The notes beneath the pieces are model-generated. The model had not been told where the DNA came from. It made no database searches and saw nothing but the letters and a program-made list of their open reading frames with translations. Positions 1,043-47,740 of a stretch of 64,000 nucleotides of DNA are shown piece by piece. Made by a program: the position numbers and the translations under genes. The stretch is taken from positions 62,001 through 126,000 of IMG/VR virus record IMGVR_UViG_3300035698_035366; one strand, written 5' to 3'. The first letter of the stretch is position 1. Each line of letters starts with the position of its first letter.

Positions 1043-4000
1043 ATGAGCTGGAAAAAACATTTGGCTGCCGTACCACAAGGGCAAAAACTCCAAGCTGCAA
1101 TTGATAGAATGCACGCTAATATGGATAATGAAGCCATTACTGGTACGAGTGGTAAATTTACTTCTTATCTACCAGAAGTTTATTCTGGGCAAGATAACCG
1201 TATTGAAAGATACGGTCAATATTTGAACATGGATAAAGATCCAGCCGTCAATGCTGCATTGGATACCATTTCATATTTCTGTACACAAACTGAAGAAGAA
1301 TCACCTTTGATGTTCAAAATTGATTACTTTGATAATGTCACTGATGCGGAAACAGAAGTGTTACAAGCTTCCCTTAGAAAATGGACATTAATCAATAAAT
1401 TCAAACAACGACTATTTGGTATTTTCAGAAAAACTATTATGTATGGTGATCAATTCTTTATTCGCGACCCAGAAACATTTGAACTGCATTGGGTCAATCA
1501 CGAAAATGTTGATAAGATAATTGTAGATGAGGCACAAGGAAAGAAACTTGATCAATTCATAGTTAGGGATTTGGATTTGAATCTGCAGACATTAGTAGCA
1601 ACTCAGCCTAGAAAAGGACGTGGTTCACAAGGACCAACAGGGTGGGCTGGAACGCCTAAGGCCGCTGGACCAGTCACTGTTCCATCATCAGCAGGTGGTT
1701 ATGGTACAAGGTTTGATACTGGTCAAGGTGAATATATTGATGCAAATCATGTTGTTCAATTCTCTCTTTCAGATGGACAAGACGCAAATTGGCCGTTTGG
1801 TTCTTCAATTTTGGAATCAGTTTTCAAACCATACAAGCAGAAAGAATTAATTGAAGATGCGGTTATCATTTATCGAGTTCAAAGAGCACCTGAACGTAGA
1901 GTATTTTATATTGATACTGGTAATGCACCCCCACATAAGGCTATGGAGTTCGTTAATCGAATTTCAAATGAAATACACCAACGACGTATACCAACACAGA
2001 CTGGTGGTGGATCAACAATTATGGATGCAGCATACAACCCATTGTGTTTAGCGTTAGACACAACTATACCGCTATTAGATGGTAGAACACTTAAATTGGA
2101 AGAATTGATTACTGAATATAACCAAGGTAAAGAAAATTGGACTTATAGTTGTGACCCTATAACAGGTAAGATTGTTCCTGGTAATATTACATGGGCAGGT
2201 ATCACACGCAAAAACACACAAGTGATTAAATTAAACCTGGATGATGGAACTTCAATTACATTAACACCAGACCACAAAGTACCGGTTTTAGGTAAAGGAT
2301 TCGTCGAAGCACAACACCTGACTAAAAATGATTCATTGATTAGTTATGAAACACGAGAAAAAAGCCTAGTTTCTTCGGATAATGATAGAACATACACTCA
2401 AATTTACGATCATGAACAAAATGAATGGGTTTATGTTCATCGGTTAGTTAATAAATTCTTTAGAGATATTAACAAACATCAAGAATTTACATATCTACCA
2501 GAAAATATTAATTCTCATAAAAGTGTTGTTCACCATAAAGATTTCAATCGATATAATAATGATCCTAGGAATCTACAATTAATGAATCACTTAGACCATA
2601 TTAGATACCATCAGGATACTAATTTTTGGCAGCATATTTCAGAGAAAGAAGCTGAACGAATTAAATTAAAAATAAGTAAGACCTTAAAAAATCGGTGGGA
2701 AAATATTACCGATGATGAAAAAAGAATTTCTTTAAAAAATATAAGAAAAGCGCAGCAACAAGCAGTTTGGTTAAGAAATAATGACAATGATCATGCAACA
2801 AAATATGCTGTTAATTTTGGAAAAGCAAGACGTGAAAAAATTAAAAACGATCCTGATTTCAAAAAACGAATTACTTCACATTTAACAAATTGGCAAGAAA
2901 ATATGCCTAATCAACGAAAGAATTACACTCAAAAGATGTTACAATTAGTAATTGATGTTGTTAGAGAAAATGATTCAAACCGTGTTAATACAGCTAAAAT
3001 ATTAAATGAAAATGGTGATATACTTAACGAAATTAAATTAGTAAATCCAGTAGATCCTAAAAAGAATAATAAAATTGGTTATACAACATTCACTCCTGAA
3101 AATCTCGACGGTATTATTTCTAATTTCGGATACAAAGGATGGAAAGACTTTAAATCTAAAATTAATGTTTATAATCATAGAATTACCTCAATTGAATGGT
3201 TAGATGAAAAACAAGATACTGGCACAATAACAATAGATGGTAAAGAAAAATGGCATAATTATCATACCTTCCCAGTAAATAATAGCATTTTTGTTAAAAA
3301 TTCAATGATTGACGATTATTTCTTTCCACAAACTGCAGAAGGTCGAGGATCAAAGGTTGAAACTCTTCCGGGTGGAGATAGTTTAGGTGAGATTGATGAT
3401 TTGAAATATTTCAATAATAGAATGCTCGATGGTTTGCGCGTTCCCCGTTCATATATTTCAACAGGACCAGATGAAAACCAAGGTGGGTTAAGTGACGGTA
3501 AGCTCGGAATGGCTTATATGCAAGACTTTAGTTTTGGCAAGTATTGTGGTAGAATTCAAGATCAGCTAAATCCAACATTTGACCGTGAATTCAAATTATT
3601 TCTAAAGGACCGCGGTATTCAAGTTGATTCAGGTATGTTCCAAATTGAACTTCATACGCCGCAGAATTTCTCAAAGTATCGCCAAATTGAGGCTGATTCA
3701 GCACAAATTTCAGTATTCCAACCACTAGCTGATGTTCCTTACTTGTCTAAGCGATTCCTAATGAAACGATTCCTAAATCTTTCAGATGAAGAAATTCTTG
3801 AAAATGAGGAATTGTGGAGAGAGGAAAATGAAGAATCTGCAAATGATGCAATGGGTATAAATACTGGTGGTGGAGGCGGAGGTGCCGCTGGCGTTTCAGG
3901 CCTGAGTGCTGTTGGTATTCGTCCAGATGAAGGTGGTGAAGATATTGATACCGGAGAAGAATTGGAAGGCACGGAATCGCCAATCTCTGGTGGTGAAGCT

Positions 4001-4045
4001 GGTGAAGTCGAAACAGGTGAAGAAGCCCCTGAAGTGGAGTTATAA
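1043..4045 (+). CDS. Portal protein (T4 gp20-like) interrupted by an intein
   Basis: gp20 motifs IEDAVIIYRVQRAPERRVFYIDTGN, SMIDDYFFP..EGRGSKVETLPGG..LGEIDDLKYF. Confidence 0.92.
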   Translation: MSWKKHLAAVPQGQKLQAAIDRMHANMDNEAITGTSGKFTSYLPEVYSGQDNRIERYGQYLNMDKDPAVNAALDTISYFCTQTEEESPLMFKIDYFDNVTDAETEVLQASLRKWTLINKFKQRLFGIFRKTIMYGDQFFIRDPETFELHWVNHENVDKIIVDEAQGKKLDQFIVRDLDLNLQTLVATQPRKGRGSQGPTGWAGTPKAAGPVTVPSSAGGYGTRFDTGQGEYIDANHVVQFSLSDGQDANWPFGSSILESVFKPYKQKELIEDAVIIYRVQRAPERRVFYIDTGNAPPHKAMEFVNRISNEIHQRRIPTQTGGGSTIMDAAYNPLCLALDTTIPLLDGRTLKLEELITEYNQGKENWTYSCDPITGKIVPGNITWAGITRKNTQVIKLNLDDGTSITLTPDHKVPVLGKGFVEAQHLTKNDSLISYETREKSLVSSDNDRTYTQIYDHEQNEWVYVHRLVNKFFRDINKHQEFTYLPENINSHKSVVHHKDFNRYNNDPRNLQLMNHLDHIRYHQDTNFWQHISEKEAERIKLKISKTLKNRWENITDDEKRISLKNIRKAQQQAVWLRNNDNDHATKYAVNFGKARREKIKNDPDFKKRITSHLTNWQENMPNQRKNYTQKMLQLVIDVVRENDSNRVNTAKILNENGDILNEIKLVNPVDPKKNNKIGYTTFTPENLDGIISNFGYKGWKDFKSKINVYNHRITSIEWLDEKQDTGTITIDGKEKWHNYHTFPVNNSIFVKNSMIDDYFFPQTAEGRGSKVETLPGGDSLGEIDDLKYFNNRMLDGLRVPRSYISTGPDENQGGLSDGKLGMAYMQDFSFGKYCGRIQDQLNPTFDREFKLFLKDRGIQVDSGMFQIELHTPQNFSKYRQIEADSAQISVFQPLADVPYLSKRFLMKRFLNLSDEEILENEELWREENEESANDAMGINTGGGGGGAAGVSGLSAVGIRPDEGGEDIDTGEELEGTESPISGGEAGEVETGEEAPEVEL
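2045..3301 (+). mobile_element. Intein (~419 aa) with HNH homing endonuclease
   Basis: Starts CLALDTTIPLLDG, block B LTPDHKV, ends ..HNYHTF..IFVKN followed by +1 Ser; internal VVHHKDFNRYNNDPRNL HNH motif; removal restores NPL|SMIDDYFFP. Confidence 0.88.
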
Positions 4046-4310: not shown

Positions 4311-4894
4311 AATCTTAATTTGAATAATAATCTATCATCTTCATTTTGGAAATAAAATATTGGATATATATTAATATATACTTTATTAAACGAATCAACA
4401 AACATTATATCAGCATGAAACCCGAAAGAAGCGTTTATTTTATCTTCTTCTAAGTAATTAATATATTCTTTTAATCCAACCCTGATGATAAAATCACTAA
4501 TGCGTTTAGCGTGTACATTATGGTATAGATTATTATCCCCCAATTCATACATATAATATGTAGAAAATTCTAAAATAGTGTGCCCAATACAAGAAAGCTT
4601 ATACGGGTCAAGTATAAAGTCATCAAGTTTCAGCATATATCTGTGAGTCTTTAATGATCTTTTATGCGTTTCTGTTAAATAACCTCTTAATTGGTTAACG
4701 TTTACTTGATTTTTTATATCACCTTCATAAGAATAGAAAGTAAAATTATACTTAACGTCGTCGACGCGATTTTCGTACGGCTGTATCGCGGTTGGCTCCA
4801 TAAAATTCAGGATCTTTTCGAGCCACCCATTTAATAAATTTTTTAATTTCATCGTGATCATTGATCCGATCCCATGTATAATACCAGTTTGCAA
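4307..4894 (-). CDS. Hypothetical, FxxxxD/ExxxFxL paralog family (start may be 4801)
   Basis: Ends IFYFQNEDDRLLFKLRF. Confidence 0.6.
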   Translation of the reverse strand: MQTGIIHGIGSMITMKLKNLLNGWLEKILNFMEPTAIQPYENRVDDVKYNFTFYSYEGDIKNQVNVNQLRGYLTETHKRSLKTHRYMLKLDDFILDPYKLSCIGHTILEFSTYYMYELGDNNLYHNVHAKRISDFIIRVGLKEYINYLEEDKINASFGFHADIMFVDSFNKVYINIYPIFYFQNEDDRLLFKLRF

Positions 4895-5048
4895 GTTCTT
4901 TCTCCGTAAACACTGAATGAATTTTTTGGTGACATACGCGATGTATCGTTTCAGTACCAGTCCCTTTTTTAGCTTTGGGAATCATGTGATGGTTATCAAT
5001 ACTTTTTCCTTGTATTAATTCTCTACCACACATTGGACAATTATTCAT
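4752..5048 (-). CDS. HNH endonuclease
   Basis: CPMCGR..HHMIPKAKKG..IHRVCHQKIH. Confidence 0.8.
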   Translation of the reverse strand: MNNCPMCGRELIQGKSIDNHHMIPKAKKGTGTETIHRVCHQKIHSVFTEKELANWYYTWDRINDHDEIKKFIKWVARKDPEFYGANRDTAVRKSRRRR

Positions 5049-5676: not shown

Positions 5677-6137
5677 GTCATTTTAGTTAACAATAAATCT
5701 TCTTGATTTTTAAAAATAATTGCGAAACAATTGACTGAATTTGAGTAAACGTCCTCAGCCCTCACGAAATTGGTACTCCAAGAAATCCTTTGCTCGTTAA
5801 TCCATTGTGTGAATGGTTTATGTCTCCAGCTAAGAGAACAATTATCTTCATGAATTTCTTTAACAACAAACGTTCCATCAAGGTTTGAGACTTGGCTACT
5901 TATATGTTTCAATTCCTGAGGCTTGATAGCACACATTAACCACACAAAGGGTTTTCTAGAATATATGGGATGTTCAGAATCGTATCTCCATATATTACAA
6001 TGTGGGAAATTTTCCAGTTCAAGAATTTTCCATTGTCGATCGGAGAGCTCGAGATTCATACCCCGAGCCCTCTCTATTGCAGATAAATCCGAAGTACGAT
6101 ATTCCTCATACTTCTCGGGTGATACCTTGCCAATCAT
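5667..6137 (-). CDS. Hypothetical, same C-terminal motif family
   Basis: Likely start MIGKVSPE at 6137; ends IIFKNQEDLLLTKMTWV. Confidence 0.55.
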   Translation of the reverse strand: MIGKVSPEKYEEYRTSDLSAIERARGMNLELSDRQWKILELENFPHCNIWRYDSEHPIYSRKPFVWLMCAIKPQELKHISSQVSNLDGTFVVKEIHEDNCSLSWRHKPFTQWINEQRISWSTNFVRAEDVYSNSVNCFAIIFKNQEDLLLTKMTWV

Positions 6138-6684
6138 CTCCCATTTCCTCAATTTGCCTAAATAACCCCTTGCTAATCGACCCCTTAACTGTGACATCAA
6201 AACCAAGAGCAGCAACCCCTCGGACGAAGAAGTCGACACAAATATCAGTAGCAACGCCACCAACTTCGATTTCATTAACACCAGCAGCGAGCATTTCAGA
6301 GAAGAATTGATCTCTTGTCTTCATTGTACCGTATCCTTCGATTCTGAGATTATCCTCTTCGAAGGTGTCGAACGCATTCTTGTAAATGGTATATACCGGA
6401 ATGTCTGAATTGATCACTAATTGATTAACCGCCAGACGTGAGCCAACGGTGTTTTTTACACAGTGGCTTGGGAACGGTGTGCCATCTGGCATAGTTTCAA
6501 CAAAGTCTGCTTCATGCCAATCCTTAGTGAATACAACTGCTTCAATCTCATCGGGATTCAGGTCAATTAAATACTGGGTCATCGGAATAATTAATTCCTT
6601 TGAACCGGGGATTGGTAATTTCGAACCCACCAAATCCAGGAAGTCTACCTGAAAATCTACAATACCTACTAACTTCTTTGCCAT
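6106..6684 (-). CDS. pncA: Nicotinamidase (isochorismatase family)
   Basis: VDFQVDF, TKDWH, FPSHCV..T.GS, KNAFDTF, GVATDICV. Confidence 0.88.
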   Translation of the reverse strand: MAKKLVGIVDFQVDFLDLVGSKLPIPGSKELIIPMTQYLIDLNPDEIEAVVFTKDWHEADFVETMPDGTPFPSHCVKNTVGSRLAVNQLVINSDIPVYTIYKNAFDTFEEDNLRIEGYGTMKTRDQFFSEMLAAGVNEIEVGGVATDICVDFFVRGVAALGFDVTVKGSISKGLFRQIEEMGDDWQGITREV

Positions 6685-6764
6685 CTTACAATCTCCTTAT
6701 AGACGGTTTTTCAATGTGACCAAATGATCCAATTTTGATCCGCTTCATGCGTGACCGAATTACA

Positions 6765-8324
6765 TTATTTTATAATCTTAAAAACTTCAAGCAAATCGAA
6801 CGGATCAATGTTTCTTTCGTTTGCAACAACAATAACCTTCTTAGCTTTATTAAGCCAGGTATTATGTGCATCTGATGGTGTCTCCCAAGAACCATAAAAC
6901 CAACTACATCCTTCAGCGTGATTATGATGGCATAGTGTTTCATGTAATTCCTCAGCGAGTCTACGATCATTGCTAAGTGCCATAAATCTTTGACGTTGTT
7001 TTTCACGTTTTTCTAATTCTTCGCGGAGATCTACAATCTCTCCTTCAATGCATTCTTCGATTGTCTCAAAACTTTGCGTAACCATTATCCTCTCCCACAA
7101 TTGTTATAATATCTCGAATCTTCTGTTGTAGAACTGTGATCTGTTGATCTCTCGATCTAATTTCTCTTTCATGATCTAAACGTGATACTGGCTCCAATTC
7201 TCTAATTCTAACAAACATTGGATTATTATAATCCTTTGCTTCTTTATCAGCCTTGGTTCTGGCAGATTTTTCATTCTTGGCATCAACGATAATATCAACA
7301 CTTTGATGGGGACCAACCTCATATATTGCCTCAAACTGTTTCATCTACCAATTACCTTCATAATGCCTTAATTTTTCTTCATCAGTAAAACCATCTCTTT
7401 GATCCACTCAATGCGTGACCCGATCTCTTACATGCAATCCAAAGCATATTCTTCTAACTCTTCAATATCTTGTCCCTTTGCCCATTTACAAAAAGCATGA
7501 AATTCATATTGTTTATAAAGTTTCGCAGCCTTGAATAACCCAAAGACTCGTTTCAATTGTAATTCCCTTTCAGGTAATGATAATTCTTTGCTCATTATCT
7601 TTACCACCTTAATCCAGCAGCACGTTCAGCAGATTCCAATTGTTCGGCGTCAGTAAACCCACCACCATCTCTTTGGGCGGCTTCTCGTGTCCAAGACGAT
7701 TCACTTGCTTCTTTCCGGTTCAATAGTTCTTTCATCCGATACATTTTCGTTGACAATTCCAGGACAAGAGAAATAAGTTCATCTTTTGATAACTTCTTTA
7801 ATTCCTCTAACGTTTTCATTTTATTTTACCTCACTATTATTATAACAATATTTTGTAAATTGTCAACATTTAATCACCGAAACCGCCATGGTAATAACTT
7901 TGTTTATCGTCTTGGACAAATGAATTTCCTAGTCGTTCGGCATATTCAGTATATATTTCTTCATCTGACCTTGCTGATAACCTTAGAATAGTCTTTGATT
8001 GCATCTCGATAATTGCAATCAATTCATCAACAGATTTTTCTTTCAATTCTTCTTTTTTCATATCTCTACCTCTTTAACCCAATTGTTGGCATCTTGCACA
8101 CATTCATCGTATGGAGTTGGTATATAACGGCTATTCTTTGAAGTCCACACTTGTCTACGCTTAGAACATACTGAACATTCTTGTCCGGTTAGGATACCGT
8201 ATCCATGAAATAGTTTCTTATCCACCCAATGACAATATCCGAGGTTATGGAGTTTCTTTCTAAAATATAGTCTTAATCTCGTTAACAAAGTTTTAATCCT
8301 TTGCCCAAAAACTCTTTGGCTCAT
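6765..8324 (-). CDS. Six small hypothetical ORFs (6765-7100, 7066-7344, 7428-7595, 7601-7819, 7870-8061, 8058-8324)
   Basis: Tightly packed, same strand; 7601-7819 and 7870-8061 share an MKxxELKxxSxDELI start. Confidence 0.55.
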
Positions 8325-8910
8325 TAATACGGAATTCTTCTGGAAAATTATACTCTACAATTTTCCAATTAACCCGGGGAACCCATTCCTTCCAATCATC
8401 GGAGCGAAGTTCCAGAAAAGTTCGAAGATCAGTCGCTGCCGGAACTGGATTAGCGTTACGGTCCAAAACATGTAGGACTCGAGTAATTACATCGTCATTT
8501 ACATAATCCTGTCGGTTTTTCATACCAAACTGGTCATCGCATTTTTCTTCTGGCATAAAACGGCCTTCATACCAACGACCGTCGGCCCGGGATCCGGTAA
8601 AATAATCAGTTGGCTCGGGTAAACCAATCTTGGTTATCTTCTCCAAAATATAATCAACCCACTGGTTGGTTCCCTCAACAGTTCCAAGATCGTTTAGCTG
8701 AACGATTTTCAATCGATCACCGTACACATTTTGGACCATCTTCTTTCGTTCTTCGAACGTGTATGGATCCCACTTTTCACGGCTTTTCTGAGACGAGCCA
8801 ATGCACAGGATTGCGGTCTCATGATCCCGAATCATTTTATTGATGATCCGGCAATGCCCTTCATGTAGAGGTTGAATTCTCATTACCGCAAGTGCAATTC
8901 TTGTTACCAT
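8293..8910 (-). CDS. NMN/NaMN adenylyltransferase (NadM-like)
   Basis: RIQPLHEGH (HxGH), IGSSQKSREKWDPYTFEERKKMV. Confidence 0.85.
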   Translation of the reverse strand: MVTRIALAVMRIQPLHEGHCRIINKMIRDHETAILCIGSSQKSREKWDPYTFEERKKMVQNVYGDRLKIVQLNDLGTVEGTNQWVDYILEKITKIGLPEPTDYFTGSRADGRWYEGRFMPEEKCDDQFGMKNRQDYVNDDVITRVLHVLDRNANPVPAATDLRTFLELRSDDWKEWVPRVNWKIVEYNFPEEFRINEPKSFWAKD

Positions 8911-8922
8911 AATTTTATTCCT

Positions 8923-9390
8923 TCATCCGTCCGAAATAACCCAACCGCGCTGGATAGCCAGTTCAGCTAAATCGCTATGATTGAAAGCCAGGTTCATTTC
9001 GTCAATTTCGTCGATTGGAAATCCCCGAACTTCTGCTAAATCGTCCCCGGCCACCGCATTTACAGCTTCAATATGGGTGAGGTAAGCAATGTAGCAGGTA
9101 TTAACAACATGGCCACGCGGATCAGTTTTTGGATCCGAATGGACGTGATAAAGTTCAAGATCACCAATATGATAGTCGACGCCTGTCTCTTCTTTGAGTT
9201 CACGAACAGCACACTCTTCAGTAGTTTCGGTACCAATGTTTAGGAACCCACCAGGCATACACCACTGGCCAGGAAAAGTATCAACATCATCCCGGCGCCG
9301 ACCAAGCAACATATACATTTGCCCGTTGATGAAATAAATCGGTGCAACTGTTGATGTGTTATCACCCTTCGGATACTTATATTCAAACAT
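8923..9390 (-). CDS. Nudix hydrolase, probable ADP-ribose pyrophosphatase
   Basis: Nudix box GGFLNIGTETTEECAVRELKEETGV; DPRGHVV; LAFNH. Confidence 0.88.
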   Translation of the reverse strand: MFEYKYPKGDNTSTVAPIYFINGQMYMLLGRRRDDVDTFPGQWCMPGGFLNIGTETTEECAVRELKEETGVDYHIGDLELYHVHSDPKTDPRGHVVNTCYIAYLTHIEAVNAVAGDDLAEVRGFPIDEIDEMNLAFNHSDLAELAIQRGWVISDG

Positions 9391-9448
9391 TTTCTATTCT
9401 CCTTTTTGTGCAAACTAATTATAACACATCATTGGTGGATGTAAACCT

Positions 9449-10798
9449 TTACACCGTCACTTCCTGTTCACCGATACCAGCAACATCGAAAATTTTCTTA
9501 TACATCTCAATTGCTTCGGGTGTTCCAGTTGCCTTGTTGATGTTGTTGCTGAGTTTTACAGCGGGATTACCGTCTGCTTCAACTACTTTAATAACAACAC
9601 TGAATGGGCGGAATGCTTCTTCGAGTGTTAAATTGGTTCCGGGAACACAAAGTTCTGGATCAGGTACACAACCAATAAAATCATTCGTTAGGTTTGTTCC
9701 CCAACCATATGGTGTGGTGATTTGTTTCCGGAAATATCCCTGCAATTCAACAATGTCGGGATCATTTAGGCCATCTGAGAAAATATTCGTTTTCTTCAGA
9801 ATTTCTTCATTGTTCAAACCATTGTCACGCAACCACTCGATGAACTTTGTGGCTTCCGTGCGGGGATCGCCCGAGTCCTGACGCTGTCCTCTCCATGAGG
9901 TAACAACTTCCTGTCGAAGATCATCTGGCATACCAGCGTAAAACTGCTCGGATCCGAATGTATCAGGAAGCATGATTCGAAGACCCTTGTTAAACAGTGG
10001 GCCCCATTTCCGCAGGACATCATATTGTGCCATACGCTTCTTTTCGTAAGGGGCAATTGCCGTCATAATCATTGGAAGTTCATGGGCATTTGTACCAATT
10101 GGAACCAGGTCACCATTAAAAGCCATCCATGTATTGGAAGTGCCAACGAAACTAGCCTTCAAAACTTCCTGGCACATTTCGATAGCTTTCTTCTGCCAAA
10201 GGAAACTATGCCTGCGCCTCTGTCCAAAATCTGAAACCAATGCATCAGGAGCATTATCCCGAATATTACATAGCTTCTTGTATAGCTTATCAGTTGCGCG
10301 ACCGTACATGATGTCAATGTCTGTTGGTGACATAAGTTTCATTAGATTCCGGTAATAAAGTTCAGAAATAATGGCAAGAGCAATCGTTTCCCAATCCTTA
10401 GTCATCTGCCATGGACCGTAAAATTCAAGATTGAATTGATCACCTTCAACTGAAAGTGTGTATCCGGAAAGCTGTCTATTTTTCAAACTATCAATATAGC
10501 TTTCGGAGAACATATTCTTACCGTAAACATCCATACCACGAAGATAATAAATATCAGTCAAACGGTATTTTAGTGTTTGGACGTGGTCGAGTTGCTCACG
10601 TAATTGCTGTTCTGGGATAATTTTTGCCAACGGAATCGCCTTATTGCGATTGATTAGCTTAAACCGAACCATAACATTGTCCAGTTCATTTGCGTGGATA
10701 TACTGTCCCATCGTCAGTTTGTAAAAATCAATGTCCATAAGACTACGGACAATGTAATCCGACTGTTGATGGCGTACCTGTTGTGCGAAATCAGTCAT
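9449..10798 (-). CDS. pncB: Nicotinate phosphoribosyltransferase
   Basis: SLMDIDFYKLTM, DFGQRRRHS, GTSN, PIGTNAHE, RQDSGDP, IFSDGL, GWGTNLTND, AVKLSNN..KATG. Confidence 0.93.
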   Translation of the reverse strand: MTDFAQQVRHQQSDYIVRSLMDIDFYKLTMGQYIHANELDNVMVRFKLINRNKAIPLAKIIPEQQLREQLDHVQTLKYRLTDIYYLRGMDVYGKNMFSESYIDSLKNRQLSGYTLSVEGDQFNLEFYGPWQMTKDWETIALAIISELYYRNLMKLMSPTDIDIMYGRATDKLYKKLCNIRDNAPDALVSDFGQRRRHSFLWQKKAIEMCQEVLKASFVGTSNTWMAFNGDLVPIGTNAHELPMIMTAIAPYEKKRMAQYDVLRKWGPLFNKGLRIMLPDTFGSEQFYAGMPDDLRQEVVTSWRGQRQDSGDPRTEATKFIEWLRDNGLNNEEILKKTNIFSDGLNDPDIVELQGYFRKQITTPYGWGTNLTNDFIGCVPDPELCVPGTNLTLEEAFRPFSVVIKVVEADGNPAVKLSNNINKATGTPEAIEMYKKIFDVAGIGEQEVTV

Positions 10799-11560
10799 TT
10801 TCTTTCTCCTTAACGAGCGTCATCATAAGCATTGGCATACCATATTTTGTAGAACTACCGCCTCTATAACACCTGGAATAAACTACGTCGTAGCCATATT
10901 TTTTAGCTAGGTTGTTTACAGCGAAACGCTGTATATCAGCTGCTGGTACACTATGCTTAGAATTGCGTTTATCCCATTGTTTTTGTTTATTGTTATATTG
11001 TTCCCACCAATATTGCAAATAATCATTGTTCTCGATATTAAGTCTAGCAGCAACTACGATATTGATAATGTCAACACCGTTTTCACTGCAAATTTTGATA
11101 GTACGTTCTTGATCCTCGTCGAAATTCTTGATACCATCATAATCAGCAACTCGCACCCTGACTTTTTTAGCAAACAAGTCTTCTAAAACGTCATTAAACA
11201 TTGCACGTTTAATATGCGGCCTAGCTGCTTGATTGGATACTTTACCACAAAGTCTAGTAGCAGCATTCATCAAACTTTTATATGCCTTAAAGTTCCAGTC
11301 GACGAAATGAAGCTGATCTAGGCTTCTAAAACCCAAACCATTGATAAATTCGTTGATATGGTTTTTGAAATTTGAGGGAGTACCCCCAGGAAGTGTTACG
11401 CACACACCTGAATCGAAACCTGCGGGATAAAGCTTATTGATTATTTCTGAATATTCAGAAATCACTTCATGCTTTTTCGGACTTCCGGTTTTAGCTTTAC
11501 CATTCTTATAATTCTTCGAATGTGTTATTCTTTTTTCATCTTTTCAATTTTAGAAATCAT
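10791..11560 (-). CDS. Hypothetical in NAD operon, apparently frameshifted near the 5' end
   Basis: Strong RBS and ATG at 11560; frame continues into 10791-11465 after a 1-nt shift in an A run. Confidence 0.5.
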
Positions 11561-11615
11561 TTCTGTATCTCCTTTTAAGAATAATGAGAAGGAAAATCGC
11601 TCTCTATCACTCTTC

Positions 11616-12551
11616 TTACTGTAGTATAGCAGGCTTATACTGATTGTCAAGGCTTGCCAATTTGGCAAATCTGGACTTATCAAGCGGGTTGTCCAAATAA
11701 GCTGGATTGTAACGCTTGAACGCACTTGCTTTCATACGTTCCGTTACTATCTCTAGAACCTGTTTGGATCGTTCGTCGTTAACTTCAACATCATCTGCGA
11801 GAATTGACATGGTCATAATGTCCCATTCAAGGTAAGAGCAACCAAACTGAGCTTCATCACCATCGTCAATACCTAAACCATCAGTAGGTTTAGCTGTATA
11901 GATGTTTTCAGGAACGCCAGCAAGTCGAGCCATCACAGGAACTTCCCATGACTTCCAAAGAGATTGAATTGGGCTAAGGTCGCCGACATCGCCATGTAGT
12001 GTCCAAAAACCAGCTGTTAATTCTGAAAAATTGTCAGTTGATGCAACGAGGCCACCGCGACCATTCGCATAGTTATAAAGGGTGATCATCCGTAGTTTCG
12101 CACGAATATTACCGTTCATAATGTCTTTGCGCCGGGCCTGACCAGTAAAGTTACCGTTGAGTTTTTCACTCATAACATCGTATTCATTGCTTAGATCGAC
12201 GATGTGGCTTTCAATTCCGAGAGAATTGCAGGCTTCAATACCACGTTCAGTCTCTTCTGGATTCTGATGAATCGGCATTACAACACCAATAACCGTCCAT
12301 CGTGCTTCTTTGAACAATGCGGCTGTAAGTGCGGAATCAACTCCGCCGCTCATACCAACAACCACAGTTGCAATAGATGCTTGATGACGATACGCAATCA
12401 GTGCATCAACAATACCTTCACGCATTTCTGCAATCTGTGCTTCGGTTTTAAAGGAATTATTTTGGATTAGCTTGTTAAGCTGCTGGTCCAACCAACCTGT
12501 TAGTGGACCTTGAGTATCCTGACGGGATACTGATAGGAGTGTATTCTTCAT
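11616..12551 (-). CDS. nadE: NH3-dependent NAD+ synthetase
   Basis: VVGMSGGVDSAL, GNIRAKLRMITLY, STDNFSE..GFWTLHGD, KPTDGL..DE.QFG.SY.E.D. Confidence 0.92.
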   Translation of the reverse strand: MKNTLLSVSRQDTQGPLTGWLDQQLNKLIQNNSFKTEAQIAEMREGIVDALIAYRHQASIATVVVGMSGGVDSALTAALFKEARWTVIGVVMPIHQNPEETERGIEACNSLGIESHIVDLSNEYDVMSEKLNGNFTGQARRKDIMNGNIRAKLRMITLYNYANGRGGLVASTDNFSELTAGFWTLHGDVGDLSPIQSLWKSWEVPVMARLAGVPENIYTAKPTDGLGIDDGDEAQFGCSYLEWDIMTMSILADDVEVNDERSKQVLEIVTERMKASAFKRYNPAYLDNPLDKSRFAKLASLDNQYKPAILQ

Positions 12552-12647: not shown

Positions 12648-12676
12648 TTTATACACTGATTAATTTAATCTGTCAA
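12648..12676 (-). promoter_or_regulatory. Sigma70-like promoter for the NAD operon
   Basis: TTGACA-N17-TATAAA on minus strand. Confidence 0.7.
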
Positions 12677-14482: not shown

Positions 14483-15118
14483 ATGTATAGACGCGGTTTA
14501 ACAGAGGTATTGAATTTCAAGCAGTCACATGCAGAAATCCTCACAGAGGATAGAGCAGATGGCGGTAAGAACCTTTATATGAAGGGGATTTTCTTGGAAG
14601 GAGATGTGCGTAATCATAACCAAAGAGTTTATCCAACTAACGAGATTAAGACGGCAGTGGAGACACTAAACGAGACAATCCGTGATGGAGAAAGCATCCT
14701 TGGTGAAGCGGATCACCCAGAAGAATTAAATATCAACCTTGACCGTGTTTCCCATGAAATTACTGAAATGTGGATGGATGGTTCCCGTGGTTGTGGTAAG
14801 CTAAAAGTGCTACCAACACCCATGGGGAACATCGTTCGAACATTATTAGAAAGCGGCGTGAAACTAGGTGTTTCAAGTCGTGGTTCAGGTAATGTAGACA
14901 ACAACGGTATGGTTTCCGAATTTGAAATTGTTACTGTCGATGTTGTGGCTAAACCAAGTGCTCCAAGTGCCTATCCTAAGGCAATTTATGAAGCATTTAA
15001 TATGCCACGTCACGGTGCAATTGTTGAAGACTTAGCCGTTGCTATGCAACACGATCCAAGAGCTCAAGCGTTTCTCGCAGAGAAACTACTAAAGTTCATG
15101 GAAAGTTTAAAAAGTTAA
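14483..15118 (+). CDS. Prohead protease (T4 gp21-like)
   Basis: YMKGIFLEGDVRNHNQRVYP, LGEADHP, LGVSSRGSG, DVVAKPSAPSAY. Confidence 0.93.
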   Translation: MYRRGLTEVLNFKQSHAEILTEDRADGGKNLYMKGIFLEGDVRNHNQRVYPTNEIKTAVETLNETIRDGESILGEADHPEELNINLDRVSHEITEMWMDGSRGCGKLKVLPTPMGNIVRTLLESGVKLGVSSRGSGNVDNNGMVSEFEIVTVDVVAKPSAPSAYPKAIYEAFNMPRHGAIVEDLAVAMQHDPRAQAFLAEKLLKFMESLKS

Positions 15119-16404: not shown

Positions 16405-17640
16405 ATGACTAAACTTTTTGAATCACAGTGGAAGAAGACAAAGTCCGCTCTTTGCGAAGGCAGAGATTTAGAATTTAACCAGGATGGTTCCCGTAACGAA
16501 ACTAAGAAAGCAGTTATGGAAACAATTTTGGAAAACACACACAGAGAAATGACCCGTCTGGGTCAGATGCCTTTGATGGAAACAGCAACAGCGGGATCAT
16601 CTTCTGCTGGTAATATTGCTACTCTAAACAAGGTTATTCTACCAGTTATCCGTCGTGTTATGCCAACCGTTATTGCTAACGAAATTATTGGTGTTCAACC
16701 AATGACAGGACCAGTAGCTCAGATTCATACACTTCGCGTTCGCTACGGCGACACTGTTCCATCACTAGGTGGCGGTGTAACAGCAGGTAACGAAGCACTA
16801 TCACCATTTGATATCGCTCGTTATTACTCAGGTAATGAAGATGTAACAACTCCACTAGCTGCTCCTACAGCACGTCTAGAAGGTGTTCCAGGCAACCGCT
16901 TGAACATTGAAATCCTAAAGGAAGTTGTTGAAGCTAAGACACGTCGTCTATCCGCACGTTGGACCTTTGAGGCTCAGCAGGATGCACAGGCACAGCAGGG
17001 CATCGACATTGAAGCAGAAATTCTTGCAGCATTAGCTCAGGAAATTACCGCTGAAATTGACCAGGAAATTCTTGGTTCCCTACGTCGTCTACCAGGCGCA
17101 CCAACAATTACCTTTACACAGGGTACAGTTACAGGTACTCCAACATTCGTTGGTGACACCCACGCTGCCCTAGCAGTTCTAATCAACCAGCAGGCCAACC
17201 TAATCGCTGCACGTACACGTCGTGGCGCAGGTAACTGGGTTGTTGTTTCTCCAACTGCTCTAACCGTTCTACAGTCTGCTACAACATCAGCATTCGCACG
17301 TACAACTGAAGGTGTTTTCGAAGCACCAACAAACACAAAGTTCGTTGGTACTCTTAACTCTTCAATGCGCGTTTATGTTGATCAGTATGCAGATGATGCA
17401 ACCCCAGTCCTAGTTGGATATAAGGGTGATGGTGAAATTGATGCCGCAGCTTATTACTGCCCATATGTTCCACTAACATCTTCTGGTGTTGTTATTGATC
17501 CACAGACATTCGAGCCAGTCGTATCCTTCATGACACGTTATGGCTACCTAGAGCTAACCAACTCCGCTACCTCTCTTGGTAACGCTGCTGATTACCTAGG
17601 CCTAATCGGAATCGACACTGCAACTCTAAAGTTCCAGTAA
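16405..17640 (+). CDS. Major capsid protein (T4 gp23-like)
   Basis: IRRVMPTVIANEIIGVQPMTGP, AKTRRLSARWTFE, YCPYVPL, FMTRYG. Confidence 0.95.
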   Translation: MTKLFESQWKKTKSALCEGRDLEFNQDGSRNETKKAVMETILENTHREMTRLGQMPLMETATAGSSSAGNIATLNKVILPVIRRVMPTVIANEIIGVQPMTGPVAQIHTLRVRYGDTVPSLGGGVTAGNEALSPFDIARYYSGNEDVTTPLAAPTARLEGVPGNRLNIEILKEVVEAKTRRLSARWTFEAQQDAQAQQGIDIEAEILAALAQEITAEIDQEILGSLRRLPGAPTITFTQGTVTGTPTFVGDTHAALAVLINQQANLIAARTRRGAGNWVVVSPTALTVLQSATTSAFARTTEGVFEAPTNTKFVGTLNSSMRVYVDQYADDATPVLVGYKGDGEIDAAAYYCPYVPLTSSGVVIDPQTFEPVVSFMTRYGYLELTNSATSLGNAADYLGLIGIDTATLKFQ

Positions 17641-17667: not shown

Positions 17668-17696
17668 AACCCGGGGCTTTATGCCTCGGGTTTTTC
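17668..17696 (+). terminator. Intrinsic terminator after MCP
   Basis: AACCCGGGGC-TTTAT-GCCTCGGGTT followed by T run. Confidence 0.8.
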
Positions 17697-19334
17697 TTTA
17701 TTCCATACCCAAACATTATTGCCACAATCCCATATTCTATCATACCCAATTGTTTGCATATATTTCCATTCAGATAAGTCTGTTTTTGGTAATTTTTTCT
17801 TTTGATATTTATAACGTGATTCCCTGATTTCATAATTTCGTGTATATGAATATCCTGGAGATGTCATTTTTTTGAATTTGAATTTATTATGTTTGTACAC
17901 ATTACCATTACCGTATCTTAAATCAGCATATGATAATATAGTATCCGGATCATTATTCTTTATAAAATAATTTAATAACCTTGAAAATCCACCAGTAACA
18001 GTTGTTCCTTGCAAGGAAGTAAATCTAGTCAATTCCCATTCATATGATCTATCAAATCTGGATTTTGAAAATGATGCAACTGATACCAGTGAATCGTCAT
18101 ATACTAAACCAATGTTTATAAGCGAATTTATATGGCCCTGTATATGATTTTTATTATGAAATTTTTGAACATCAGAATTGGATAACTCATTTATGGAACA
18201 TTTTCTTGCCATCAATTTGTTGTTAAAAATTCCCAATTTAGCCGATATAACCGATTTAACAATATCTTGTTTTTGTTTCCATTCATCACTAAAAATTGTT
18301 ATAAGTCTGATTCCTTTATCATTACATTTTACAAATTTATCTTGATGGTATTTTGGATGTTTCGATGAACTTAATTCAGAATGCCAATACAAACCACAAT
18401 ATTCAATTGCAATATTATTATCTGGAATTAATATATCCAATTCATATGGATTAATTAATGATCTATCTCCTGACAATGCATTTACACCTAATGATTTTAC
18501 AAAATCAAATACTTCTAGTTCTTCTCTAGATTTATAAATTACAGGCGTAGGGTTGCATATTTTGCACTCGGGACGTCGACCATTATCAATATACGTGGAG
18601 AACGTATGATCACAACTTATACATTCAAAATCATAATATTTTTGATTTGAAACACCTTCATATAAATCAATTGGTGTTATAAACTTTATATTACAATTTT
18701 CTTTATAATATTCATTTAATTTTAGATATGAAATTCTTTTGAAATGCTCATTCGTATACAATTTTCTTCTAGTTGCTGCTGATTTCCTAGCTACAACTGG
18801 ATCCACCATTGGGTTTTTTTCAGTCAACCGTTTCATAACGTGGGGGAGATGGGCAGCATTTTCAACACCATATCTATCCATCATTGTTTGTTTATGTGTA
18901 GCTAGTTGTTTTTTTATATTATTCTGACTTGCGTAGAAAATCTGGTGTTGTTTTCGAGCATGTTCTGATTGCCCAGCGTTTTCTACACCATATTTTTCTA
19001 AATTTGTTTGATACCTTTTTTCATTAATTTGGTCCTTTTCTTCTTTGTTATATGATTGTTTGGACTGACTTACCTTTTCGGAGACCGTTTTTCTTGCGCA
19101 CTCGCATACACCAGTCCTACCGCAGAACTTATATCCTCTAACAATTGAATCGAATTTTTTCGTATTACCATTAACGCAAATGTTTAATCCTGGATAGATT
19201 TTATTATACACAAATTCTGCAAAAGGAGACGAGTTATCAAACGCAAGCCAATCCATTATTTCAGGATCTTTTTTCAAAAACCTTGAATAATGTTTTGGAT
19301 AATCGTCAATTGTCTTTAGTATTTTATCCCGCAT
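17679..19334 (-). CDS. Free-standing putative homing endonuclease
   Basis: Repeated xxKYGVEN, Zn-finger CxxC pairs, ELDILIP..IAIEYCGLYWH nuclease motif; very low GC. Confidence 0.7.
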   Translation of the reverse strand: MRDKILKTIDDYPKHYSRFLKKDPEIMDWLAFDNSSPFAEFVYNKIYPGLNICVNGNTKKFDSIVRGYKFCGRTGVCECARKTVSEKVSQSKQSYNKEEKDQINEKRYQTNLEKYGVENAGQSEHARKQHQIFYASQNNIKKQLATHKQTMMDRYGVENAAHLPHVMKRLTEKNPMVDPVVARKSAATRRKLYTNEHFKRISYLKLNEYYKENCNIKFITPIDLYEGVSNQKYYDFECISCDHTFSTYIDNGRRPECKICNPTPVIYKSREELEVFDFVKSLGVNALSGDRSLINPYELDILIPDNNIAIEYCGLYWHSELSSSKHPKYHQDKFVKCNDKGIRLITIFSDEWKQKQDIVKSVISAKLGIFNNKLMARKCSINELSNSDVQKFHNKNHIQGHINSLINIGLVYDDSLVSVASFSKSRFDRSYEWELTRFTSLQGTTVTGGFSRLLNYFIKNNDPDTILSYADLRYGNGNVYKHNKFKFKKMTSPGYSYTRNYEIRESRYKYQKKKLPKTDLSEWKYMQTIGYDRIWDCGNNVWVWNKEKPEA

Positions 19335-47569: not shown

Positions 47570-47740
47570 ACTATCGTCCTAATGATGGATTCACTTATAC
47601 AATATTTAGCATCTTTTAAAAAATACACAGTTTTTATACTCGTCTGCTAAATACCAACGTATAATTTATGTGTATGATTGCATGAATAAAACAATTTGAA
47701 TAATATGCAATTTGCAAGAAACATTAAGGAGAGATATATA

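What the first reader, a model, noticed from the sequence alone, without database searches (positions are those of the whole stretch)
6106..12551. Complete deamidating NAD+ salvage route (PncA-PncB-NMNAT-NadE) plus Nudix in one phage operon
Seen: all four steps Nam->Na->NaMN->NaAD->NAD+ with a putative ADP-ribose pyrophosphatase, co-oriented. Knowledge: Thoeris/SIR2/DSR defences cleave NAD+ to Nam + ADPR; the described phage counters are NARP1 (Adps+Namat) and NARP2 (Nampt+Nmnat). Inference: a third, Preiss-Handler-type reconstitution pathway. No PRPP synthetase is in the window, so PRPP would come from elsewhere. Individual genes are known in other jumbo phages.
Basis: partly seen in the sequence, partly recalled or inferred. 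Interest (0 to 1): 0.68.

Follow-up and report, generated by a model that had tools for sequence, protein, structure and literature searches.

The report
Phage island rebuilding NAD+ from nicotinamide
A giant T4-like phage from a salt lake carries its own set of genes for turning nicotinamide back into NAD+ by the nicotinic-acid route; the set is real and recurs in other giant phages, but this kind of cluster has already been reported and nobody has tested whether it defeats bacterial NAD+-destroying defences.

Summary
On the minus strand of 6106-12551 lie a nicotinamidase (PncA-like), a NadM-type NMN/NaMN adenylyltransferase, a Nudix hydrolase of the ADP-ribose-recognising clade, a nicotinate phosphoribosyltransferase (PncB) and an ammonia-type NAD synthetase (NadE). 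All catalytic motifs are intact. The same five genes occur in the same order in 12 IMG/VR contigs and in the cultured Sinorhizobium phage Phosso.

Three points need correcting.
- It is not a tight operon. Seven ORFs of unknown function are interspersed, and four near-consensus sigma-70-type promoters sit in intergenic gaps.
- The phage does encode a canonical PRPP synthetase, about 223 kb away. That gene is missing from nine of ten other large records that carry a related PncB, so it is not part of the module.
- "Third pathway" is out of date. NARP3 is now PnuC+NadR, and complete Preiss-Handler clusters in jumbo phages were reported from genomics in 2024.

Most likely function: early-expressed salvage of nicotinamide to NAD+ through Na, NaMN and NaAD. 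Still open are a counter-defence role, the NaMN versus NMN preference of the adenylyltransferase, NaAD versus NaMN for NadE, and the Nudix substrate. I file it as a new member of a known kind, of moderate interest.

The parts
11616..12551 (-). NadE: single-domain, ammonia-type NAD+ synthetase, 311 aa, with the SGGVDS PP-loop and a roughly 45-aa N-terminal extension
   Evidence: PF02540 5e-46 and TIGR00552 152.7 bits, above its cut-off of 63.65. Best PDB matches are 2E18, 3P52 and 3FIU. The SD sequence ggtgaggt precedes the ATG.
12648..12676 (-). Sigma-70-like promoter (11 of 12 positions) in the 143-nt gap upstream of NadE
   Evidence: Genome-wide, such sites number 90 against 16.7 +/- 3.2 in shuffles.
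10791..11465 (-). u224: 224-aa ORFan between NadE and PncB. Its stop overlaps the PncB start by 8 nt. Function unknown.
   Evidence: No Pfam, NCBIfam or PHROG family. Only itself among 5.8 billion proteins. The single-sequence AF2 model has pLDDT 45 and is unusable. It is present, without any difference, in contigs from other salt-lake runs.
11623..11650 (-). Sigma-70-like promoter (11 of 12, with extended -10 TG) upstream of u224/PncB
9449..10798 (-). PncB: nicotinate phosphoribosyltransferase, 449 aa, with the GTNAHELPM motif (H239) at the position I recall, from memory and unchecked, as the phospho-histidine of PncB enzymes
   Evidence: PF17767 plus PF04095. NF003704 347 bits, just under its cut-off of 379. 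PDB 1YBE (Agrobacterium NAPRTase) 6.3e-95 over residues 2-448. H239 is invariant in alignment A1.
9418..9445 (-). Sigma-70-like promoter (11 of 12, with TG) in the 58-nt gap upstream of Nudix
8923..9390 (-). Nudix hydrolase, 155 aa. Nudix-box residues E55, R63, E64, E67 and E68 are intact. It belongs to the NrtR / NadM-Nudix (ADP-ribose-recognising) clade.
   Evidence: PF00293 4.9e-19. Best NCBIfam model is the ADPR-responsive NtrR. PDB matches are 2FML, 3I9X and 3GZ8, then 2QJO and 2QJT with the family profile. Invariant residues are listed in A4. It is the only Nudix in the 296-kb record.
8293..8910 (-). NadM-type (archaeal-type) NMN/NaMN adenylyltransferase, 205 aa, with motifs RIQPLHEGH and PAATDLR
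   Evidence: NF002243 2.3e-14 and TIGR01527. AF2 model pLDDT 84.9, pTM 0.82. The top 14 Foldseek matches are all archaeal NMNAT or NadM, with TM-scores normalised to the target of 0.74-0.78 for the single-domain archaeal enzymes. Motifs are invariant in 15 phage homologues.
6765..8324 (-). Six small ORFs of unknown function: 8058-8324, 7870-8061, 7601-7819, 7428-7607, 7066-7344 and 6765-7100
   Evidence: No Pfam family, apart from a weak PF08302 hit (E = 0.008) and phrog_12218 for 6765-7100. None is found in the related loci.
7839..7866 (-). Perfect sigma-70 consensus promoter (12 of 12, with TG) upstream of ORF 7601-7819 and, further downstream, PncA
6106..6684 (-). PncA-like nicotinamidase, 192 aa, with catalytic triad D10/K102/C149 and metal ligands D55/H57/H74
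   Evidence: PDB matches are led by nicotinamidases (1ILW 1e-12). A profile of 20 phage homologues hits seven nicotinamidases at 3e-44 to 4e-31, ahead of other isochorismatase-fold enzymes. D10, D55, H57, H74 and C149 are invariant and K102 is at least 90% conserved.

Best explanation
The island is a phage-encoded deamidating NAD+ salvage module.

Proposed steps:
1. The PncA-like enzyme deamidates nicotinamide to nicotinate.
2. PncB joins nicotinate to PRPP to give NaMN.
3. The NadM-type adenylyltransferase makes NaAD.
4. The ammonia-type NadE amidates NaAD to NAD+.
5. The adjacent Nudix most likely hydrolyses ADP-ribose to AMP and ribose-5-phosphate, as the Nudix domain of bifunctional NadM-Nudix enzymes does.

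PRPP comes from the host, and in this phage also from its own canonical Prs elsewhere in the genome.

The genes sit as a minus-strand accessory island inside the T4-like head-gene block. Four near-consensus sigma-70-type promoters suggest transcription early by host RNA polymerase.

The net effect would be to hold up or rebuild the NAD+ pool of the infected cell from nicotinamide. That covers both drainage by a host NADase defence and the demands of a very large phage.

Shown here: gene identities, intact catalytic motifs, the NMNAT fold, conservation of the module, and promoter enrichment.
Inferred: every enzymatic activity, the substrate order, the timing of expression and the biological benefit.
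For: - Family and structure matches for all five enzymes.
- Catalytic residues are invariant across phage homologues: the PncA triad and metal site, the NMNAT HxGH and xATxLR motifs, the Nudix REx2EE residues and PncB H239.
- The five-gene order NadE-PncB-Nudix-NMNAT-PncA recurs in 12 IMG/VR contigs plus phage Phosso. Nineteen loci have at least NadE, PncB, NMNAT and PncA.
- PncB, NMNAT and PncA distances co-vary (Mantel r 0.59-0.70, p <= 0.0005).
- In L006, L017 and L028 the NadE slot holds a two-domain glutamine-dependent NAD synthetase. As far as I recall, every characterised enzyme of that type amidates NaAD. This argues that the partner adenylyltransferase supplies NaAD.
- Four other loci have fused NadM-Nudix proteins next to PncB.
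- No NAMPT or Namat and no PnuC is present in the record.
- Sigma-70-like sites number 90 against 16.7 +/- 3.2 expected. Four lie in island gaps.
- The Prs is canonical and lies among phage genes.
- A cellular precedent exists: bifunctional NadM acting with a conventional NAD synthetase in Acinetobacter (PMC3376133).
Against: - No activity has been measured and no RNA data exist for this phage.
- The NMNAT matches known enzymes by sequence only over its first 60-120 residues, and NadM enzymes generally use NMN well (PMC3376133).
- The NadE is about as close to the Francisella NMN synthetase (3FIU, 2e-21) as to archaeal NAD synthetases (2E18, 1e-24).
- PncB scores just under the NCBIfam cut-offs (347 against 379 bits; 230 against 270).
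- The Nudix substrate is inferred from clade membership only.
- Prs is absent from nine of ten other large records with a related PncB, so an ADPR->R5P->PRPP loop is not a conserved feature.
- Seven interspersed unknown ORFs could change the picture.
Confidence: 0.72

Rival explanations
1. Same enzymes, selected specifically as a counter-defence. On this reading the island is a fourth NAD+ reconstitution pathway. It rebuilds NAD+ from the nicotinamide released by Thoeris, DSR, SIR2-HerA and similar NADases, and so rescues phage replication. The Nudix, with the phage Prs, would recycle the ADP-ribose half into PRPP.
For: - The pathway starts from nicotinamide, which is a product of the NADases; the PncA-like gene is conserved in 19 loci.
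- Early-type promoters are present.
- The island has an accessory position inside the structural block.
- Three validated phage pathways with the same purpose provide precedent (10.1101/2024.02.11.579819; PMC13464706).
- Unknown genes inserted in NARP1 operons have turned out to be anti-defence genes (PMC13232231).
- This phage has its own Prs.
Against: - Nothing here tests defence. The host is unknown.
- The route is long and costs much ATP compared with NARP1, NARP2 and NARP3.
- From general knowledge, hosts such as E. coli carry the same pathway and are still depleted by NADases.
- Prs is not conserved with the module.
- The 2024 genomic survey interprets such clusters mainly as NAD+ supply (PMC11662467).
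Confidence: 0.4
2. Francisella-type order of steps. PncA and PncB make NaMN, the short NadE acts as an NMN synthetase (NaMN->NMN), and the NadM-type enzyme then adenylates NMN to NAD+.
For: - The adenylyltransferase is of the NadM family, not NadD.
- NadM enzymes use NMN efficiently. In Francisella, replacement of NadD by NadM goes with a NadE homologue adapted as an NMN synthetase (PMC3376133).
- 3FIU, which I recall from memory to be that Francisella enzyme (the PDB table labels it only NH3-dependent NAD+ synthetase), is among the three best PDB matches of the phage NadE.
Against: - The best PDB match is archaeal-type NadE (2E18), and the one archaeal NadE tested, from M. jannaschii, is a true NaAD-using NAD synthetase (PMC3376133).
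- Archaeal NadM is bifunctional for NMN and NaMN, and Acinetobacter pairs NadM with a conventional NAD synthetase (PMC3376133).
- In L006, L017 and L028 the same module carries a two-domain glutamine-dependent NadE.
Confidence: 0.2
3. The Nudix does not recycle ADP-ribose. It might degrade NADH or NAD+ or NAD-capped RNA, destroy ADPR-derived immune signals, or sanitise nucleotides. On this reading its position next to the NMNAT reflects regulation rather than pathway chemistry.
For: - Nudix substrates cannot be read reliably from sequence.
- Several of the PDB matches are other kinds of Nudix enzyme, for example NudI and an entry titled 8-oxo-dGTPase domain.
Against: - The best NCBIfam model (the ADPR-responsive NtrR) is an ADPR-binding family. 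From memory, the top PDB matches (2FML, 3GZ5/3GZ8) belong to the related NrtR-like group; their PDB titles say only 'MutT/nudix family protein'. NadM-Nudix ADPR pyrophosphatases (2QJO, 2QJT) also match the family profile.
- The gene sits directly upstream of the NMNAT in 13 loci and is fused to it in four others, mirroring NadM-Nudix enzymes.
Confidence: 0.25

Closest known systems
'NAD-jumbo phages' with Preiss-Handler gene clusters (Microbiome 2024, PMC11662467)
   Same: A jumbo phage that carries, clustered, all genes needed to make NAD+ by the Preiss-Handler route (pncB, an adenylyltransferase, nadE). The paper also mentions phage pncA. It is genomic prediction only.
   Different: - The example cluster in the paper uses nadD; here the adenylyltransferase is NadM-type, with a separate Nudix gene.
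- A divergent PncA-like gene extends the route back to nicotinamide. PHROGs lists that family as 'unknown function', and the homologues are annotated 'hydrolase' or 'hypothetical' in cultured phages.
- The habitat is a salt lake rather than the gut, and the phage is T4-like.
Sinorhizobium phage Phosso (PV764938) NAD gene array, and Agrobacterium phage Atu_ph07
   Same: Phosso has NadE, one hypothetical gene, PncB, four small genes, Nudix, NMNAT and a 'hydrolase' (the PncA-like gene) in the same order and orientation, at 30-42% identity. Atu_ph07 has PncB with Nudix, NMNAT and the PncA-like gene nearby.
   Different: - The intervening small genes are unrelated.
- No NadE lies within 8 kb of PncB in Atu_ph07.
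- Neither phage has a Prs.
- From GenBank these are annotations only. The Atu_ph07 paper mentions PncB, NUDIX, NadR and PnuC but not the full route (PMC6102473).
NARP2 (Nampt + Nmnat, e.g. Vibrio phage KVP40 NadV/NatV)
   Same: It rebuilds NAD+ from nicotinamide and PRPP and includes an NMNAT. In KVP40 NatV the NMNAT is joined to a Nudix-like module (PMC13464706).
   Different: NARP2 is an amidated two-step route through NMN using NAMPT. Here there is no NAMPT (one PF04095 hit, of the PncB type). Instead there is a four-step deamidated route with PncA, PncB and NadE.
NARP1 (Adps + Namat)
   Same: The stated purpose is to regenerate NAD+ from the products of NADases. One of its enzymes has a PRPS-family fold.
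   Different: - NARP1 pyrophosphorylates ADPR and joins it directly to nicotinamide.
- Here the only PRPS-like protein is a canonical class I Prs (467 bits to NF002320; PDB 3DAH 7e-105). It lies 223 kb away among nucleotide-metabolism genes.
- The phosphoribosyltransferase here is a NAPRTase, not a NAMPT-like Namat.
NARP3 (PnuC + NadR; PMC13464706)
   Same: A phage NAD+-restoring gene pair that contains an NMNAT domain.
   Different: NARP3 imports nicotinamide riboside. No PnuC is present in this record, and the NMNAT here is NadM-type and only 205 aa long, too short to carry NadR's ribosylnicotinamide kinase domain as well.
Cellular NadM with a conventional NAD synthetase (Acinetobacter) and bifunctional NadM-Nudix enzymes (Synechocystis, Francisella)
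   Same: - A NadM-type adenylyltransferase working with a conventional NAD synthetase (PMC3376133).
- A Nudix associated with NadM (PDB 2QJO, 2QJT, 2R5W).
   Different: - Here the Nudix and NMNAT are separate genes in the reverse order (Nudix first).
- NadE is single-domain, whereas the Acinetobacter enzyme is the fused type.
- All the genes are clustered on a phage genome.

Membership tests
Nicotinamidase (PncA) within the isochorismatase-like superfamily | Asp-Lys-Cys catalytic triad | tested here: met
   D10, K102 and C149 align with D10, K94 and C133 of P. horikoshii PncA (the 1ILW alignment; the roles of the 1ILW residues are recalled from the literature). D10 and C149 are invariant and K102 is at least 90% conserved in 20 phage homologues.
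Nicotinamidase (PncA) within the isochorismatase-like superfamily | Metal-binding Asp-x-His ... His site, which separates nicotinamidases from other isochorismatase-fold hydrolases | tested here: met
   D55, H57 and H74 align with D52, H54 and H71 of 1ILW and are invariant. The family profile hits seven nicotinamidases at 3e-44 to 4e-31; other isochorismatase-fold enzymes score 2e-22 or weaker.
Nicotinamidase (PncA) within the isochorismatase-like superfamily | Score above the curated family cut-off | tested here: not met
   NF008623 scores 38.6 bits against a cut-off of 174. Only the general PF00857 model passes (34 against 27 bits). This is a divergent, phage-specific subgroup (phrog_19305, 'unknown function').
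Nicotinate phosphoribosyltransferase (PncB) | NAPRTase N-terminal and catalytic domains, full-length similarity to solved NAPRTases, and a conserved histidine in the GTxAHE motif | tested here: met
   PF17767 plus PF04095. PDB 1YBE at 6.3e-95 over residues 2-448. H239 in GTNAHELPM is invariant. The equivalence of H239 to the phospho-histidine is from memory and was not checked.
Nicotinate phosphoribosyltransferase (PncB) | Score above the NCBIfam cut-offs | tested here: not met
   NF003704 scores 347.1 bits against 379, and TIGR01514 scores 230.1 against 269.55. Both are near misses, so this is a divergent member.
NadM / archaeal-type NMN(NaMN) adenylyltransferase | Nucleotidyltransferase fold closest to archaeal NMNAT, with the HxGH and C-terminal xxTxxR motifs | tested here: met
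   AF2 pLDDT 84.9. Foldseek ranks 1-14 are all NMNAT or NadM. RIQPLHEGH and AATDLR are conserved.
NadM / archaeal-type NMN(NaMN) adenylyltransferase | Ability to use NaMN, which the canonical Preiss-Handler order requires | not testable with these tools
   Supported only indirectly: module relatives carry two-domain NAD synthetases, and archaeal NadM is reported as bifunctional (PMC3376133).
NH3-dependent NAD+ synthetase (NadE) | PP-loop ATP pyrophosphatase domain (SGGxDS) without a glutaminase domain | tested here: met
   PF02540 5e-46, TIGR00552 152.7 bits against a cut-off of 63.65, and no CN_hydrolase domain. The motif SGGVDS is visible in the alignment.
NH3-dependent NAD+ synthetase (NadE) | Preference for NaAD over NaMN (NAD synthetase as opposed to NMN synthetase) | not testable with these tools
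   PDB neighbours include both kinds (2E18, 3P52, 3FIU). The paper that defines the determinants was not available.
ADP-ribose pyrophosphatase (Nudix) | Intact Nudix-box catalytic residues | tested here: met
   E55, R63, E64, E67 and E68 are invariant. There is a one-residue insertion in the box loop relative to 2FML.
ADP-ribose pyrophosphatase (Nudix) | ADP-ribose as the preferred substrate | tested here: inconclusive
   The nearest models and structures are the ADPR-responsive NtrR family, the NrtR-like structures and NadM-Nudix. Clade membership does not fix the substrate.
NARP1 | An adjacent Adps (remodelled PRPS-like) and Namat (NAMPT-like) gene pair | tested here: not met
   The single PRPS-like gene is a canonical Prs 223 kb away. 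The single PF04095 gene is of the PncB type.
NARP2 | NAMPT together with an NMNAT | tested here: not met
   No NAMPT in the 296-kb record. An NMNAT is present. The record is only 79% complete, so absence is not proven.
NARP3 | A PnuC transporter together with a NadR-like NMNAT/RNK enzyme | tested here: not met
   No PF04973 match. The NMNAT is NadM-type and 205 aa long.
NAD-jumbo phage with a Preiss-Handler cluster (PMC11662467) | A phage genome over 200 kb encoding every step of one complete NAD+ pathway | tested here: met
   The record is 296 kb, and the same phage lies on contigs of 362,903 and 407,795 bp. Portal, sheath, tube and Gp23 genes flank the island. PncB, an adenylyltransferase and NadE are present, and PncA as well.

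The most novel reading that the evidence does not exclude
The conserved NadE-PncB-Nudix-NMNAT-PncA module is a fourth, deamidating NAD+ reconstitution pathway that lets jumbo phages escape NADase-based immunity. In this phage it would be coupled to recycling of the ADP-ribose half through Nudix and the phage Prs into PRPP. The lineage-specific genes wedged into the island (u224 and the six small ORFs) would be accessory anti-defence factors, as RyDEP is in NARP1 operons.
Probability: 0.3. Interest if true: 0.65.

Novelty: new member of a known kind. Interest (0 to 1): 0.42.

Why it matters
If it is active, this module shows that phages have captured the long nicotinic-acid route as well as the short nicotinamide routes (NARP1-3), complete with a nicotinamidase that starts from a product of the NADases. 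The module is conserved across very divergent jumbo phages, two of them cultured: Phosso with the full array and Atu_ph07 with a partial one. That makes it a ready, testable candidate for a fourth NAD+-restoring counter-defence.

It also gives a likely function to phrog_19305, a phage protein family now labelled 'unknown function' or 'hydrolase'. The idea itself is not new: Preiss-Handler clusters in jumbo phages are already published, so the value lies in the experiment rather than the concept.

Tried and rejected
- **Near-identical DNA in the phage collection:** none found.
- **u224:** the protein-atlas search, the word-based homologue search and a single-sequence AF2 model (pLDDT 45) gave nothing usable, so no fold search was attempted.
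- **ORF 6765-7100:** the atlas search gave no hit.
- **Papers:** those that define the NMN-synthetase determinants and NadM specificity (PMC2651253, PMC2258087, PMC2998121) are not held. I did not test specificity residues from memory.
- **Expression:** no RNA runs exist. The contigs laid on the stretch show only that the identical sequence occurs in several salt-lake runs.
- **Prs as a host flank of a 'provirus':** rejected, because it lies 1.3 kb from a T4 rIIB homologue among small phage ORFs on a 363-kb contig.
- **Prs as an Adps (NARP1):** rejected, because it passes the canonical Prs cut-offs and matches bacterial and human PRPS at 1e-85 to 1e-105.
- **Prs as a conserved partner of the module:** rejected, because it is absent from nine of ten other large records.
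- **A single operon:** not supported, given four near-consensus promoters in the gaps.
- **NAD-consuming phage enzymes as the rationale:** no NAD-dependent ligase was found, only one Macro-domain ORF.

Full report
**1. What is there**

The window is bases 62,001-126,000 of a 296,119-bp IMG/VR virus record, estimated 79% complete. The same phage lies on JGI contigs of 362,903 and 407,795 bp and comes from salt-lake metagenomes.

It is a T4-like jumbo myovirus. The window holds these phage genes:

| Gene | Window coordinates |
|---|---|
| Portal | 1043-4045 |
| Prohead protease | 14483-15118 |
| Gp23-type major capsid protein | 16405-17640 |
| Tail sheath | 47696-50944 |
| Tail tube | 61912-63426 |

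A block of minus-strand genes from about 4.3 to 13.2 kb sits between the plus-strand portal and prohead-protease genes. It therefore looks like an accessory island inserted in the head-gene block.

**2. The five enzymes**

*NadE, 11616-12551.*
- It is a single-domain PP-loop NAD synthetase: PF02540 at 5e-46, and TIGR00552 at 152.7 bits, above its cut-off.
- Its best solved relatives are the short enzymes 2E18, 3P52 and 3FIU.

*PncB, 9449-10798.*
- It has both NAPRTase domains and matches the Agrobacterium NAPRTase 1YBE at 6e-95 over its whole length.
- The histidine of the GTNAHE motif is conserved.
- It narrowly misses the NCBIfam cut-offs.

*Nudix, 8923-9390.*
- Its Nudix-box catalytic residues are intact.
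- Its nearest NCBIfam model is the ADPR-responsive NtrR family. Its nearest structures are 2FML, 3I9X and 3GZ5/3GZ8. With a family profile, the NadM-Nudix ADPR pyrophosphatases 2QJO and 2QJT also match.

*NMNAT, 8293-8910.*
- It matches archaeal NMNAT and NadM by sequence only in its first 60-120 residues.
- An alignment-based AlphaFold model (pLDDT 84.9) has archaeal NMNAT or NadM structures as its top 14 Foldseek hits.
- Both nucleotidyltransferase motifs are invariant in 15 phage homologues.

*PncA-like, 6106-6684.*
- It scores weakly on family models: 34 bits on PF00857, and far below the NF008623 cut-off.
- Even so, its solved relatives are led by nicotinamidases.
- The catalytic triad D10/K102/C149 and the metal site D55/H57/H74 line up with P. 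horikoshii PncA. Five of the six residues are invariant and K102 is nearly invariant in 20 phage homologues.
- A profile of those homologues hits seven nicotinamidases at 3e-44 to 4e-31, ahead of all other isochorismatase-fold enzymes.
- PHROGs lists this family (phrog_19305) as 'unknown function'.

**3. Not a chance grouping**

A scan of IMG/VR with a PncB alignment returned 46 loci.
- Twelve of them, plus the cultured Sinorhizobium phage Phosso, carry NadE-PncB-Nudix-NMNAT-PncA in the same order on one strand, at 24-59% identity.
- Nineteen loci carry at least NadE, PncB, NMNAT and PncA.
- Pairwise distances of PncB, NMNAT and PncA co-vary (Mantel r 0.59-0.70, p <= 0.0005). Those of NadE do so less.
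- The weaker NadE signal fits swaps of NadE type: L006, L017 and L028 have a two-domain glutamine-dependent NadE in that slot.
- Four loci have fused NadM-Nudix proteins beside PncB, so the adjacent Nudix and NMNAT genes here are a split version of that enzyme.
- The co-variation shows shared descent with the phage lineage. It is not proof of functional co-evolution.

**4. Corrections to the reading**

*(a) It is not a compact operon.*
- An ORFan of 224 aa (10791-11465) lies between NadE and PncB. It is found nowhere else among 5.8 billion proteins.
- Six small unknown ORFs (6765-8324) separate the NMNAT from PncA.
- The genome holds 90 sites within one mismatch of TTGACA-N16-18-TATAAT, against 16.7 +/- 3.2 in shuffles.
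- Four of these sites lie in the island's intergenic gaps: before NadE, before u224/PncB, before Nudix/NMNAT, and before the ORFs that lead to PncA.
- By analogy with T4 early promoters, this suggests several early transcription units read by host RNA polymerase. That is an inference; there are no RNA data.

*(b) The phage does encode a PRPP synthetase.*
- It lies at G000:C1:294588, outside the window.
- It passes the canonical Prs cut-offs and matches bacterial PRPS at about 1e-105.
- It sits among phage genes, with an rIIB homologue 1.3 kb upstream.
- It is not the remodelled Adps of NARP1.
- It is absent from nine of ten other large records with a related PncB, and its neighbours are nucleotide-metabolism genes. 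It is best seen as a general PRPP supply, not as part of the module.

*(c) No NAMPT, Namat or PnuC is present*. The island is therefore none of NARP1, NARP2 or NARP3.

**5. Mechanism**

The best-supported reading is deamidating salvage:
- Nam -> Na (PncA-like)
- Na + PRPP -> NaMN (PncB)
- NaMN -> NaAD (NadM-type enzyme)
- NaAD -> NAD+ (NadE)
- The Nudix probably converts ADP-ribose to AMP and ribose-5-phosphate.

The main biochemical rival is the Francisella order, NaMN -> NMN -> NAD+. It is possible because NadM enzymes use NMN well and a NadE homologue can act as an NMN synthetase (PMC3376133).

Three points speak against that rival:
- The only archaeal NadE tested is a true NAD synthetase (PMC3376133).
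- Acinetobacter pairs NadM with a conventional NAD synthetase (PMC3376133).
- Related phage modules carry two-domain NAD synthetases.

Sequence alone cannot settle the order. The papers that give the specificity determinants were not available.

**6. Biological role**

Two readings share the same chemistry:
- general NAD+ supply for a very large phage, which is the reading of the 2024 survey of 'NAD-jumbo phages' (PMC11662467);
- specific counter-defence against NADase immunity.

The start from nicotinamide, the early-type promoters and the accessory position fit counter-defence. Nothing here tests it. No paper found in the library shows it for this route. The validated pathways are NARP1 and NARP2 (10.1101/2024.02.11.579819) and NARP3, which is PnuC+NadR (PMC13464706).

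**7. Novelty**

- The concept of a clustered Preiss-Handler pathway in jumbo phages is published (PMC11662467).
- The same five-gene array is annotated in Phosso.
- Atu_ph07's PncB was noted in 2018 (PMC6102473).
- What this case adds:
  - the NadM-plus-separate-Nudix form of the module;
  - recognition of the divergent nicotinamidase family that closes the loop from nicotinamide;
  - the extent of conservation of the module;
  - the promoter architecture;
  - a phage Prs.
- I rate it a new member of a known kind, of moderate interest, mainly as a well-defined candidate for experiment.

Noticed in passing
window 1043-4045 (+): The portal ORF is 1000 aa. The portal family phrog_213 matches in two stretches, and an HNH endonuclease domain lies at residues 436-540. 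This may be an intein or an inserted homing endonuclease within the portal gene.
   Followed up: no
window 25486-27609 (-): A 707-aa protein matches the phage 'translation elongation factor' family phrog_6880 at 4.7e-124. The family name suggests a translation factor, which is unusual cargo for a phage.
   Followed up: no
window 17679-19334 (-) and 4752-5048 (-): A 551-aa homing/HNH endonuclease lies directly after the Gp23 capsid gene, and a small HNH ORF lies at the edge of the NAD island. Mobile endonucleases border the structural genes.
   Followed up: no
whole record G000; window sites 12676-12648, 11650-11623, 9445-9418 and 7866-7839 (all -): Near-consensus sigma-70 promoters are enriched more than five-fold genome-wide: 90 sites against 16.7 +/- 3.2 in Markov shuffles. 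They are densest at 238-294 kb on the plus strand. Four lie in the island's gaps.
   Followed up: partly
G000:C1:294588-295541 (L002:1501-2454); L051: A canonical PRPP synthetase is encoded by the phage. It lies next to a T4 rIIB homologue and near PurM-like (AIRS), aldehyde dehydrogenase, carbamoyltransferase-like and thioredoxin genes. This looks like a separate cluster of nucleotide-metabolism genes.
   Followed up: partly
window 10791-11465 (-): An ORFan of 224 aa sits between NadE and PncB, with an 8-nt overlap onto the PncB start. It has no relatives anywhere and no usable fold. It is stable in all salt-lake contigs that cover it. By analogy with RyDEP inside NARP1 operons (PMC13232231), it could be an accessory factor.
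   Followed up: partly
window 6765-7100 (-): This small ORF has a weak match to the 2H-phosphoesterase-type domain PF08302 (E = 0.008, below the cut-off) and to phrog_12218 (3.7e-16, unknown function). The atlas search gave nothing.
   Followed up: partly
G000:C1:214854-215189 (+): This is the single Macro-domain ORF of the record (PF01661, 4.8e-9), a possible ADP-ribose-binding or ADP-ribose-removing protein. No NAD-dependent DNA ligase was found in the record.
   Followed up: no
whole record: IMG/VR labels the record 'provirus'. The content is that of a T4-like jumbo phage, and longer contigs of the same phage exist, so the label looks doubtful. The first 15 kb were not examined.
   Followed up: no
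L006:3838-4398: In this related module the NMNAT has LSKGH in place of the HxGH motif. It may be an inactive or altered adenylyltransferase.
   Followed up: no
window 28029-29291 (+): A 420-aa protein has a C-terminal match to the heptose 7-phosphate kinase / heptose 1-phosphate adenylyltransferase family (phrog_7878, 3.2e-34).
   Followed up: no
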